Source: Octopus bimaculoides
Taxonomy: Eukaryota
NCBI RefSeq assembly: GCF_001194135.2
Contig: NC_068988.1
Coordinates: forward strand, 70,499,085 to 70,548,998
Direction of reading: 5' to 3'
DNA length: 49,914 nucleotides
Shown here: positions 15,038 to 18,690 of the stretch, piece after piece
Numbering within the stretch: position 1 is the stretch's first letter
Layout: every line of letters starts with the position of its first letter
Position numbers and translations under genes: made by a program
The notes under the pieces: model-generated
The model's input: only the letters and a program-made list of their open reading frames with translations
What the model was told of the DNA's origin: nothing
The model's database searches: none

Positions 15038-16395
15038 GGGTCTTGTATGTAATACGCGATTACCATGAACAATAACGGTGAAAAACTGATTGTAATCCTA
15101 AATACTCAATAACGGGTCCTTAATCCTTAGTCCTTAATTCATATTATAATGCTCCGTACATCGATCCATCTTTTATGAGGAATTAGGTTGCGTACCATCC
15201 CTTGACAAGTGCCTCCTCGATCAAGTCCTGGTGGAAACATTCGAGACTATCTTCCCACGGCATTATAAGCTCAAGCACGATAATTGTTTTTGCAATAAGT
15301 TGGAGGATACATTAGATAATGTAATTCTAGATAGCCATAAATACCTGGAATGATCGAAACGGAAATATATTTCATGAATCAGAGCCGACAAAGGTCTAGA
15401 TAACATAACGGTTATTTTTCCTTTTCAAGTGGAATGAAAATAAATTATGGTGATATTTGAACTCCAATTCTCTGCATTAGGATAGAGAAAAACCTTTCTA
15501 TATTAGCTGCCATTACTTCTTTACCTTAGGTCGATATATGGTCAAGTATGCAGATGTTCATGCTTGGATATGAGAGACAATTGGAAGGTTAACTGCAGCA
15601 ATATACTTATATCTCTAACCGCGCAACATTTCTCGGCGAGTAATGGCTGTTAAATTAACTCCAAGTCATTAATGAAAATGAAAGGCGAAACTGAAAATAT
15701 GAATACATAGGTAAATAAGTAATACAATCCTGACTATATTGCTGAACATTGCAACCCATTGCTGTACATTTTCTGTCAACTCGTCCAGAGAATATAGATT
15801 TTAGTTGAAAGATACAAATTAAATTTTATTTTAAAAATAAAAAAAATAACAGATACTTGTCTTGTTTCAAAACTAAATATATTCTAGTGATAATCTTAAA
15901 ATTACATGGATATGATTTTGCAATTAATTTTGAAAACAAAAGGAATAATGAGAACTTGACGTTGCTCTGTGGAACCTAACAACGTCAAATCAACTTGGAT
16001 ATCCAGTCTTGTAGATCTGTCATCGAAATTAATGGAAATATAATAGAATTCCATGATAAATAACATTGAACTAATCTTTCACATTACTGAAATAAATTTT
16101 AAAACTTGTTACAGAGATAATTACTTCAGCTGAATTCAACTTCCTGTGAAAGAACGCAAACGTTTATTTCTTATACTAAGATGAATTTATAGTTTGGCAT
16201 TTGTCTACATTTTAAGACATTGCTCCCCGAATAGCAATATGTCTATAGCCAAATCTTGGTTGGTTAGTAAATATACATTTTTTTATCATTAACACTAGAC
16301 ATTTTAGAGTTATTGATTGGTTCCATTCTTGTAAATGTCATTATCTAGCTTCAGTCAACATTCATGCCATTGCTGTCTTCAGATCATGTTTTCCT
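15038..16395 (+). repeat. Left arm of a large imperfect inverted duplication (partner 16925-18690)
   Basis: Colinear reverse-complement similarity traced block by block. 15991-16050 matches rc(17261-17320) at 59/60; 15541-15600 matches rc(~17704-17763) at 45/60. Confidence 0.92.
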
Positions 16396-16924
16396 GTGTA
16401 GTTTACAGATGTATTATTTTTGTTTCTGTTTTTGTTTCTTCAAACGATTCTGTGAAACGTTTAATCGATCATATTGAACCCCGTACTTGCGTACTATCAA
16501 TTATTGTATTGGCATATATTTATGGACTCACTAACTCAAGAACAATGAAGAGAGAAAACATGAACACAGAACAATATGTTGGTTGTTGAAGTAAACTCCT
16601 GAAATACACAAGTACGCTTCGTTTATATAAAATGTAACTATGCACAAGTCACAAGGAAAGAACATTCTTAATTGAAGTGACTTGACTCCTATGTGTCACT
16701 ACTAACTTGATAACATTGATCCCTCGGAAACTTGAGGTCAGGGCATAAATGGTCATTCCTAATTATGGCAACCCGTTTTCTACACTGTTCCACAGATTCT
16801 GGCTCACAAGAGAGCTGTTCATACAGTGAATATACAATATTACCAAGAAGATTACTGTGGTTAAATGACAAATATGCATGTCTACTATAGTTTCTTATGA
16901 AAATTCATTGACTTTCTGCCTAGC

Positions 16925-18690
16925 TTTAAACATTATTTTGAAGATACAATGATATGAACACTGTCCGAAAGTGGTTCGTACTAGTTGAATTATGATATAA
17001 GCAGGTACTAAATCAATGATCAATAACTCTATAAGGAAGAAATAAATGTTAATATTAACTATAAAAATTACATTTGTTGACTCATCAAGATTTGATCACA
17101 GATTTTCTGTCATATGATCTGCAACGAACAAAAATACCGAATTAGCATACGAAATAGACTTTTACGTTCTCTCTGATTAGGCTGAAGTAATTATATTTAT
17201 AACAAGTTTCAAAATTTATTTCAGTAATGTGAGAGATTAGGACAAAGTTATATGTCATGCAATTCTATTATATTTCCATTAATTTCGATGACAGATCTAC
17301 AAGACTGGTTATCCAAGTTGATTTGATGTTGTTTAGTTCCATAGAATAACGTCGAAGTTTGTTTATTTCTTTTGTTTTAAAAATTAATTCCAAAATCATA
17401 TCCATGTAGTTTTAACATTATCACTAGAATATATTTCGTTTTGAAACAAGAAAATATTTATTTCGTATTTTATTTTTTACAATAAAATTTGATTTGAATT
17501 AACACTATATAATATTGGAAACACTATATTTTTAATGGAAGAGTTTACAGACAGTGTACAACATCGAAATATATTCCTTGCATTATCCAGTTATCTCTAC
17601 ATTCTAATTTGCAGCTTCGCCTATTATTTTATTAATGCCTTCAAGTGAATTTAATGGACATTACTCACCTTGAAATGCTGCTCGTTTAAATATTTCAATA
17701 TATTGCTACATATAGTCTTCTAATTGTATCTCACATCCAGGCAAGAATATTTGCATAGTTAGCAATGTATCGGGCGAAGTTAAAGAATGAATTGGAGCCA
17801 ATATAGGAATATGGTATAAAATTTAAAGTTCTCTCTTTTCTGAGACACAAGAATTGGAGTCCAAATATTATCATAATAAATTTTCATTCCATTTGAAAAA
17901 AGAAAAACACTCGTTGTTATTTAGAGTAATGTCAGCACTGATTCATCGCAAGTATTTCTGATTTGACCATTCCGTCTATTTACGGCTATCTAGATTTACA
18001 ATATTTAATGTGTCCTTCCCTTTGTTGTTGCTATCAGCCTTCAATAGAGAGACCTAAGACCTCATGCACTTCCAACCGTGGCCACAATATTTATATCCTT
18101 TAGTGGAAGTTTAGGATAACATTATCCACATTATGAAAAGTTTTGCCTTACGTTTTCAGGAACATTTTTTGCTGTTACTAACACGCCATGTAACCACGTT
18201 GAAACCCCTCCCAACTTTGGCTTGTCTCTATTGTGTTATTGTGTTGAACCAAAGAATTCTCACTTACGTTGTCACACTGTCTGTTAAAATAAGTAGTTGT
18301 ATCTACCTTAAACGACACTTTAGCTACTGGATGATACAGATAGAGCTGGAGAGGAGGAGCATCTCCATCAGTGAGATAATGGTAACATTGCTCAAATCAG
18401 ACACGTTCCTGCTATGCAGAAGTATAAGATCAATTATCGTGGATGAATTTACAGTGTAGGAGGACAGACGCGACATTTACCAGTTGCGGTAAACCAAATA
18501 TCTGGACTTGGTCGAGGCAGCATTTGTCAAGGGAAGGTGTTCAGTTTAAAGCCCCATGTATGCTGGACCGATATACGGAGTACCATAACATGAACTAAGG
18601 ACCAAGGATTAAAGTTCCGTTATTGAGTATTAAGGATTACAATCAGTTTTTAGTGTTAATGTTAATGGTAATCGCGTATTTTAAGACCTA
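16925..18690 (-). repeat. Right arm of the inverted duplication; carries ~400 bp (~18020-18420) absent from the left arm
   Basis: Same alignment as the left arm; ends at ttaagaccta (18681-18690), matching gggtctt at ~15038. Confidence 0.92.
17669..18687 (-). pseudogene. Putative decayed ~1 kb exon of an unidentified gene
   Basis: Acceptor-like aaattttag|G at 18688/18687, coinciding with the arm boundary, and donor AAG|gtgagt at 17669/17668. Cys-containing peptide remnants shared with the left arm (PSLDKC[LC]LDQV; C[RK][CY]SCLD[MV]R.N.K..CSNI). Multiple stops. Confidence 0.35.

What the first reader, a model, noticed from the sequence alone, without database searches (positions are those of the whole stretch)
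15038..18690. ~3.65 kb imperfect palindrome: ~1.35 kb and ~1.75 kb inverted arms around a ~530-bp spacer
Nearly every 60-bp block of 15038-16395 matches the reverse complement of 16925-18690, apart from ~400 bp extra in the right arm. No transposase or known repeat explains it. Candidates are an ancient tail-to-tail duplication of an unrecognised gene or an old foldback element. If read through, it would give long imperfect dsRNA, a potential ADAR editing or endo-siRNA substrate, relevant in cephalopods with extensive A-to-I editing.
Basis: partly seen in the sequence, partly recalled or inferred. Interest (0 to 1): 0.75.

Follow-up and report, generated by a model that had tools for sequence, protein, structure and literature searches.

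The report
Old decayed inverted duplication in octopus DNA
The inverted repeat is real and larger than reported, but it looks like an old, non-coding inverted duplication in repeat-rich octopus DNA, which is a common kind of structure there, with no sign of a gene and no evidence yet that it does anything.

Summary
The palindrome is real and larger than reported. Arms at 14135-16392 and 16927-19311 flank a ~534-bp unique spacer (blastn E 7e-176 for the core). Aligned positions are 78.6% identical (K2P 0.25). The window is TE-rich Octopus DNA.

The arms show no coding signal. All six frames are equally similar, substitutions have no codon periodicity, and Pfam and two searches of a 5.8-billion-protein database found nothing. 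There is no Rfam family and no tandem subrepeats. No other copy exists in this window or in 54 kb of other Octopus DNA, where the local SINE hits 17 times.

Two later events date the structure as old. A SINE-like element with a 14-bp target-site duplication entered the left arm only. A ~390-bp segment is present only in the right arm. One ~330-bp block is significantly better matched (89% vs 76%), most simply a gene-conversion tract.

A read-through RNA would fold arm-on-arm (-994 vs about -550 kcal/mol), but transcription is untested, and such inverted pairs are reported to be common in octopus.

Best reading: a neutral, decaying inverted duplication (confidence 0.45). Rivals are a dead long-TIR transposon or two copies of a low-copy repeat. 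Interest is low.

The parts
14135..14453 (+). Left arm, outer part. It pairs with 19311-18961 at about 71-77% identity at aligned positions.
   Evidence: blastn gives 62% over 274 columns. The local score is 47 against a shuffle mean of 14.3, z = 12.5. The alignment is shown.
14454..14774 (+). SINE-like short interspersed repeat (a partial dimer) inserted into the left arm only. It is flanked by a 14-bp target-site duplication, 14440-14453 tattatagacgttt and 14775-14788 tattatagacaatt. It is not part of the original palindrome.
   Evidence: Both flanking copies align to the single right-arm site around 18961-18973. Copies of the same family lie at 4105-4444, 19998-20130 and 20195-20401. The query hits an O. 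sinensis locus 15 times and an O. bimaculoides locus twice. This copy is about 14% from a rough family consensus.
14775..16392 (+). Left arm, main part. It pairs with 18972-16927.
   Evidence: blastn gives 14777-15228 vs 18972-18504 and 15293-16317 vs 18027-17019. The global alignment has 1789 aligned columns at 78.6% identity, K2P 0.253. The innermost 16350-16392 is marginal, z = 4.2.
16393..16926 (.). Unique central spacer of about 534 bp, or 16318-17018 on a conservative reading.
   Evidence: No self-complementarity, z = 2.2. No Pfam or protein homolog in any frame. No match in other Octopus loci.
16927..19311 (-). Right arm, the reverse complement of the left arm.
18041..18430 (.). Segment of about 390 bp present only in the right arm. 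It is either an insertion here or a deletion from the left arm at about 15229-15292.
   Evidence: Alignment gap. No flanking direct repeat above chance. No protein homolog. No copy elsewhere in the window or in the Octopus loci.
15807..16135 (+). Better-matched block, left copy. It is 88.9% identical to its partner, against 76.4% for the rest of the arms. It contains a 48-bp perfect complementary run, 16003-16050 <-> 17308-17261.
   Evidence: Fisher p = 2.7e-7. The best 300-column window beats all 2000 permutations. Base composition does not explain it and there is no codon periodicity. Only one compensatory pair appears in the two-sequence consensus folds on either strand.
17176..17509 (-). 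Better-matched block, right copy.
   Evidence: (pair I1).
15047..15146 (+). Second, shorter better-matched stretch, 87% identical to 18683-18586.
   Evidence: 85 of 98 positions.

Best explanation
This is an old inverted duplication of non-coding DNA in an octopus genome. A stretch of about 1.9-2.3 kb was copied once in reverse orientation next to itself, leaving about 0.5-0.7 kb of unique DNA in between. The likely cause is a replication template switch or fold-back repair of a break, but that step is inferred, not shown. The two copies have since drifted apart neutrally to about 21% mismatches (K2P 0.25). After the duplication, a SINE-like element retrotransposed into the left arm, leaving a 14-bp target-site duplication. 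A ~390-bp insertion or deletion made the arms unequal. One ~330-bp tract, and perhaps a second ~100-bp tract, was re-homogenised by gene conversion between the arms (inferred). The structure encodes nothing recognisable. Its only intrinsic property is that any transcript running through both arms would fold into a long, imperfect hairpin, with its best duplex in the ~330-bp block.
For: Shown. The arms are collinear along their whole length with coincident inner and outer ends, and similarity stops at both outer ends. The arms have no coding signal: six-frame similarity is equal, substitutions show no codon periodicity, Pfam finds nothing in any frame, and two six-frame searches of 5.8 billion proteins find nothing. 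There are no tandem subrepeats or internal direct repeats and no Rfam family. No further copy of the arms, spacer or extra segment exists in the other 45 kb of the window or in 54 kb of O. bimaculoides and O. sinensis DNA. In that same 54 kb the SINE query hits 17 times and nine other stretches of the window find matches. Decayed LINE and mariner remnants elsewhere in the window are still detectable by Pfam, so a LINE- or transposase-derived arm would probably have been seen. The SINE's target-site duplication maps to one undisrupted site in the right arm, so the arms predate the insertion. That SINE copy's ~14% divergence from consensus is close to the per-arm divergence of ~13%. The ts:tv ratio is about 1 and G:U-compatible mismatches are symmetric on the two strands (96 vs 89), which gives no sign of selection for pairing.
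Against: Copy number in the whole genome could not be measured. About 100 kb of Octopus DNA only excludes a very abundant family, roughly more than 20,000-30,000 copies in a genome I recall as about 2.7 Gb. A low- or medium-copy non-autonomous element would look the same. No orthologous locus could be retrieved. No breakpoint microhomology can be recognised at this age. The better-matched block could reflect constraint rather than gene conversion.
Confidence: 0.45

Rival explanations
1. It is the relic of a single non-autonomous DNA transposon with very long terminal inverted repeats, of the foldback or Galileo type. The whole 5.2-kb unit inserted once and has since decayed.
For: The arms end together at both outer ends, and a short non-coding centre lies between long inverted arms. 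The window holds several DNA-transposon remnants (mariner) and two smaller inverted-repeat structures, at 21407-21732 and 44236-44989.
Against: The arms have no tandem subrepeats. There is no target-site duplication above chance at the outer ends, although that test has little power at this age. The ends are not sharp or better conserved. No other copy was found in about 100 kb of Octopus DNA.
Confidence: 0.22
2. The arms are two independent insertions, in opposite orientation, of the same non-coding interspersed repeat of about 2 kb. They lie close together by chance or through local transposition.
For: Neighbouring inverted copies of one repeat are the usual source of inverted repeats in animal genomes (PMC5625713). 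The genome is repeat-rich (PMC8967140). The ~13% per-arm divergence is typical of old repeat copies.
Against: No third copy exists in about 100 kb, where the abundant families are hit repeatedly. For a rare family, two full-length copies within 0.5-0.7 kb of each other is improbable. The arms carry no RT or transposase remnant although they are about 2 kb long. Neither arm has its own target-site duplication (low power).
Confidence: 0.2
3. It is a functional hairpin-RNA locus, or a pair of non-coding RNA genes. The locus is transcribed, and the ~330-bp well-paired stem is kept by selection as an ADAR substrate or other regulatory dsRNA.
For: The block at 15807-16135 is significantly better matched than the rest of the arms and contains a 48-bp perfect duplex. 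The predicted read-through RNA folds arm-on-arm, with MFE -994 vs about -550 kcal/mol for the control. Octopus has exceptionally high hyper-editing.
Against: There is no evidence of transcription. G:U-compatible mismatches show no strand asymmetry. Only one compensatory pair was seen. There is no Rfam hit. Molluscs show no endo-siRNA pathway. Editing favours young repeats. Gene conversion explains the block more simply.
Confidence: 0.05
4. It is a tail-to-tail or head-to-head duplicated protein-coding gene that has since decayed.
For: None beyond the inverted symmetry itself. The longest stop-free stretch (114 codons, 18115-18456) lies in the right-arm-only segment.
Against: All six frames are equally similar between the arms. 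There is no codon periodicity. Pfam finds nothing and protein searches find no homolog.
Confidence: 0.03

Closest known systems
Neighbouring inverted repeat pairs that form intramolecular dsRNA and are hyper-edited by ADAR (inverted Alu pairs in primates; inverted repeats in octopus, PMC5625713)
   Same: Two reverse-oriented similar sequences lie within about 1-4 kb of each other. The locus meets that paper's operational criteria: at least 65% identity, and a 48-bp perfect inverted match about 1.2 kb away. The predicted RNA folds arm-on-arm.
   Different: The arms are not copies of an abundant repeat family. They are much longer and much more diverged than typical edited pairs. Transcription and editing are untested.
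Foldback (FB) and Galileo-type long-TIR DNA transposons
   Same: Long inverted arms surround a short non-coding centre, with no transposase.
   Different: The arms are not built of tandem subrepeats. No target-site duplication or family of copies was found. Arms of about 2 kb are longer than the roughly 1.2 kb I recall for Galileo.
Inverted duplications that seed hairpin-RNA genes (Drosophila hpRNA loci; plant proto-miRNA inverted duplications of target genes)
   Same: A local inverted duplication with a spacer that could form a long hairpin transcript.
   Different: Those derive from genes and yield small RNAs. Here there is no gene-derived sequence, and molluscs show no endo-siRNA pathway.
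Large genomic palindromes maintained by arm-to-arm gene conversion (for example the human Y-chromosome palindromes)
   Same: Inverted arms around a unique spacer, with local evidence compatible with an arm-to-arm conversion tract.
   Different: Those arms stay above 99.9% identical and carry genes (from my own knowledge). Here the arms have decayed to 79% and carry none, so any conversion was rare and local.

Membership tests
Foldback / Galileo-type long-TIR transposon | Long terminal inverted repeats | tested here: met
   Arms 14135-16392 and 16927-19311.
Foldback / Galileo-type long-TIR transposon | Arms composed of tandem subrepeats | tested here: not met
   TRF finds only a 29-bp array and a TA microsatellite in 13000-21500. 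There are no direct-repeat families in 14000-20000.
Foldback / Galileo-type long-TIR transposon | Target-site duplication at the outer ends | tested here: inconclusive
   The longest direct match between the outer flanks is A7, at the chance level. The ends are too decayed for a sharp test.
Foldback / Galileo-type long-TIR transposon | Multiple dispersed copies of the unit | tested here: inconclusive
   No copy in the rest of the window or in 54 kb of Octopus loci. The sample is too small to exclude a low-copy family.
Pair of copies of an abundant interspersed repeat (SINE or LINE) | The same sequence is found repeatedly elsewhere in the genome | tested here: not met
   The arms give 0 hits against 17 for the SINE control in L001 and L002. 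Nine other stretches of the window match those loci.
Pair of copies of an abundant interspersed repeat (SINE or LINE) | Remnants of RT, endonuclease or transposase in kilobase-long copies | tested here: not met
   Pfam finds nothing in six frames and there are no protein homologs. Other TE remnants in the window are detected.
Duplicated protein-coding gene pair | Frame-specific conservation, an ORF, or protein homology | tested here: not met
ADAR hyper-editing substrate (criteria of PMC5625713) | A reverse-oriented match of at least 65% identity within 2 kb, and a match of over 95% across at least 40 bp | tested here: met
   The inner arms are 72-89% identical. The 48-bp perfect run 16003-16050 pairs with 17308-17261, about 1.2 kb away.
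ADAR hyper-editing substrate (criteria of PMC5625713) | Both arms on one transcript, with clustered A-to-G mismatches in RNA-seq | not testable with these tools
   No RNA-seq or transcript data were available.
hpRNA / endo-siRNA locus | Dicer-phased 21-22-nt small RNAs from a long hairpin, and a dedicated siRNA pathway in the host | not testable with these tools
   No small-RNA data were available. The literature reports no evidence of endo-siRNAs in molluscs, including O. bimaculoides (PMC12479628).
Known structured RNA family (Rfam 15) | A covariance-model match | tested here: not met
   No hit at gathering score in the window. The only hit at E <= 1 in 14000-19500 is a chance-level match (E = 0.69).

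The most novel reading that the evidence does not exclude
The locus is transcribed through both arms in octopus neural tissue. The ~330-bp block (15807-16135 / 17176-17509) is kept well paired by selection, as a dedicated long-hairpin ADAR substrate or dsRNA regulatory element, rather than by a chance gene-conversion event.
Probability: 0.04. Interest if true: 0.6.

Novelty: new member of a known kind. Interest (0 to 1): 0.15.

Why it matters
As it stands it matters little. It is one more decaying inverted duplication in a genome reported to be unusually rich in inverted-repeat pairs. It has some value as a worked example, because nested events (a SINE insertion with its target-site duplication, an indel, and a probable conversion tract) give a relative timeline. 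Only if RNA data showed a transcribed, edited hairpin whose pairing is conserved across octopus species would it bear on how cephalopods obtain and keep their dsRNA editing substrates.

Tried and rejected
1. Coding hypotheses. All were negative. The protein searches have no positive control, because the locus itself is not indexed. They show only that no known protein homology exists.

2. Placing the window in a named assembly or reaching an orthologous locus. Exact look-ups of 20 ORFs found nothing. No host exon is evident in the window; every recognisable coding remnant is TE-derived. Synteny could therefore not be tested.

3. Copy-number sampling through LINE relatives. Only L001 (O. bimaculoides) and L002 (O. 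sinensis) were usable. Six ENA metagenome contigs (L003-L008) lack the Octopus SINE, so they come from more distant cephalopods and are uninformative.

4. Exact-pattern scans of JGI metagenome contigs and IMG/VR with the best-conserved arm core gave no match. These collections probably hold little or no octopus DNA, so the result has little weight.

5. Structured-RNA ideas. Rfam at gathering and permissive thresholds, ARAGORN, and two-sequence consensus folds of the better-matched block on both strands gave nothing convincing.

6. Target-site duplications around the whole unit, each arm, the spacer and the right-arm-only segment showed nothing above chance.

7. Assembly artefact. Rejected, because the arms differ at 21% of aligned sites and by many indels.

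8. I read a Helitron/Pif1-like helicase remnant at 2788-3003 by eye. Pfam did not support it, so I do not claim it.

Full report
**Observation.** The inverted repeat exists and is far beyond chance. An ungapped seed search of 14000-20000 returns eight collinear inverted pairs, the longest being 15812-16135 vs 17176-17499 (324 nt, 85%). Gapped blastn of the window against itself gives 15304-16179 vs 18016-17142 (E 7e-171) and 14777-15228 vs 18972-18504 (E 3e-49). With more sensitive settings these become 15293-16317 vs 18027-17019 (72% over 1066 columns, E 7e-176) and 14777-15228 vs 18972-18504 (70% over 475 columns).

So is the ~530-bp spacer, 16393-16926. The innermost ~45 bp of pairing is only marginal (z = 4.2), and the spacer has no self-complementarity (z = 2.2).

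The structure is larger than reported. Pairing continues outward to 14135 <-> 19311 (z = 12.5 against shuffles) and stops there; 13700-14110 vs 19351-19986 gives z = -1.3. The full unit is about 5.18 kb.

**Context.** The window is TE-rich eukaryotic DNA with six assembly gaps. The only long intact ORF, a LINE remnant at 39405-40319, has as its best named relatives proteins of Octopus bimaculoides (81%), O. sinensis (78%) and Argonauta hians (58%). Pfam confirms mariner remnants at 42983-43264 and 43597-43794, a weaker one at 12950-13312, and RT fragments at 1626-2066 and 6420-6923. I could not place the window in a named assembly.

**Anatomy and later events.**
- *SINE insertion.* The stretch 14454-14774 belongs to a short interspersed repeat family. 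Other copies lie at 4105-4444, 19998-20130 and 20195-20401, and many lie in Octopus loci fetched from public assemblies. It is flanked by tattatagacgttt (14440-14453) and tattatagacaatt (14775-14788). Both align to one uninterrupted site in the right arm. This is a target-site duplication, so the SINE-like element entered the left arm after the two arms existed.
- *Divergence.* With the insertion removed, a global alignment has 1789 aligned columns at 78.6% identity, with 185 transitions and 197 transversions, K2P 0.253. The inserted copy is about 14% from a rough family consensus, close to the per-arm divergence of about 13%. Both events are therefore old.
- *Right-arm-only segment.* This ~390-bp segment has no flanking direct repeat above chance, no copy elsewhere and no protein homolog. 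Whether it is an insertion on the right or a deletion on the left is undecided.

**What the arms are not.**
- *Not coding.* All six frames of the left arm match the right arm about equally well. Substitutions are evenly spread over the three codon phases. Stop-masked six-frame translations of 14780-19320 hit no Pfam family at E <= 1. Six-frame concatenates of the left-arm core, the spacer and the right-arm-only segment hit nothing among 5.8 billion proteins.
- *Not a known RNA family.*.
- *Not built of subrepeats.*.
- *Not one of the abundant interspersed families.* There is no further copy in the other 45 kb of the window, and none in 54 kb of O. bimaculoides and O. sinensis DNA. In that same DNA the SINE query hits 17 times and nine other stretches of the window find matches. 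This excludes only very high copy numbers. Six further loci from ENA metagenome contigs lacked the SINE and were set aside as too distant.

**The one unexplained feature.** Identity between the arms is uneven. Most 100-column windows are 71-77% identical, and a few short ones reach 0.81-0.86. But 15807-16135 <-> 17509-17176 is 88.9% identical (287 of 323), and 15047-15146 <-> 18683-18586 is 87%. The difference is significant: Fisher p = 2.7e-7, and the best 300-column window exceeds all 2000 permutations. It holds for A/T sites alone, so composition does not explain it.

The block contains a 48-bp perfect complementary run (16003-16050 <-> 17308-17261). It shows no codon periodicity. Two-sequence consensus folds give only one compensatory pair on either strand. 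Across the arms, G:U-compatible mismatches are symmetric between the two possible transcripts (96 vs 89). A past arm-to-arm gene-conversion tract is the simplest account. Constraint cannot be excluded without other species.

**dsRNA potential.** A hypothetical RNA spanning 15290-18030 folds arm-on-arm. The MFE is -994.5 kcal/mol on the + strand and -971.5 on the - strand, against about -550 when the right arm is shuffled. About 75% of MFE pairs are exactly the arm-alignment pairs. The locus meets the operational criteria that Porath et al. used for putative dsRNA. But that paper reports that 0.44% of random 50-bp octopus loci meet the strict criterion, exceptionally high among the 19 species it compared, and that hyper-editing is tied to long, nearly perfect duplexes. 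Zhang et al. find that editing mainly targets young repeats. A mollusc-wide small-RNA survey that included O. bimaculoides found no evidence of endo-siRNAs. So the capacity is real but ordinary, the endo-siRNA idea is unlikely a priori, and transcription is untested.

**Explanation.** I commit to an old, neutral inverted duplication of non-coding DNA (confidence 0.45). It was probably formed in one step by template switching or fold-back repair (inferred). It was then modified by a SINE insertion (shown), an indel (shown) and a local conversion tract (inferred).

The main rivals are a dead non-autonomous long-TIR transposon (0.22) and two nearby copies of a low-copy non-coding repeat (0.20). 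The first lacks the subrepeat hallmark and any detectable target-site duplication. The second is disfavoured because no third copy was found and two full-length copies sit within 0.7 kb of each other. A selected hairpin-RNA locus (0.05) and a decayed gene pair (0.03) are unlikely. A whole-genome BLASTN of one arm and an alignment of the orthologous locus in other octopods would settle the first three.

**Verdict.** This is a real feature, correctly observed but under-measured. It is best filed as a new member of a known kind (local inverted duplication or inverted repeat pair), with low interest unless RNA data show otherwise.

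Noticed in passing
window 21407-21732: A ~326-bp stretch is its own reverse complement at 79.5% (blastn E 5e-72). It starts just after the assembly gap 20581-21390 and abuts ORF fragments that I read by eye as Tc1/mariner-like; Pfam did not confirm them for 22042-22302. It may be a MITE-like hairpin element.
   Followed up: no
window 44236-44472 vs 44989-44770: A second inverted repeat: arms of about 240 bp at 78% identity around a ~300-bp centre. It lies next to mariner transposase remnants at 42983-43264 (HTH_48) and 43597-43794 (Transposase_1), both above Pfam cut-offs. 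It may be a small long-TIR non-autonomous element.
   Followed up: partly
window 26235-26781 vs 26851-27364: A direct, tandem-like duplication of about 550 bp at 76% identity. Part of 26245-27418 also matches the O. sinensis locus L002, so it includes an interspersed repeat.
   Followed up: no
window 4105-4444, 14454-14774, 19998-20130, 20195-20401; also 9656-9852 and 24579-24748: Several copies of short interspersed repeats are shared with O. bimaculoides and O. sinensis loci but absent from the more distant cephalopod contigs. This fits the SINE-dominated octopus repeat content reported in the literature. The left-arm copy is a partial dimer.
   Followed up: partly
window 1-209 vs 2354-2561: A direct repeat at 86% identity. 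It lies within what looks like fragmented LINE sequence (an RT fragment at 1626-2066 was detected by Pfam below the curated cut-off).
   Followed up: no
L003-L008 (ENA samples ERZ25067570, ERZ25878469, ERZ26696912, ERZ26222911): Records labelled as metagenome assemblies carry contigs, some Mb-scale, with cephalopod-type LINE and transposase genes. They look like host animal DNA rather than microbial DNA. They lack the Octopus SINE.
   Followed up: partly
window 15958-15990: A small local hairpin, ttgacgttg...caacgtcaa, lies inside the better-matched block. It is kept through G:U changes in the right-arm copy. With only two sequences this cannot be told apart from chance.
   Followed up: partly
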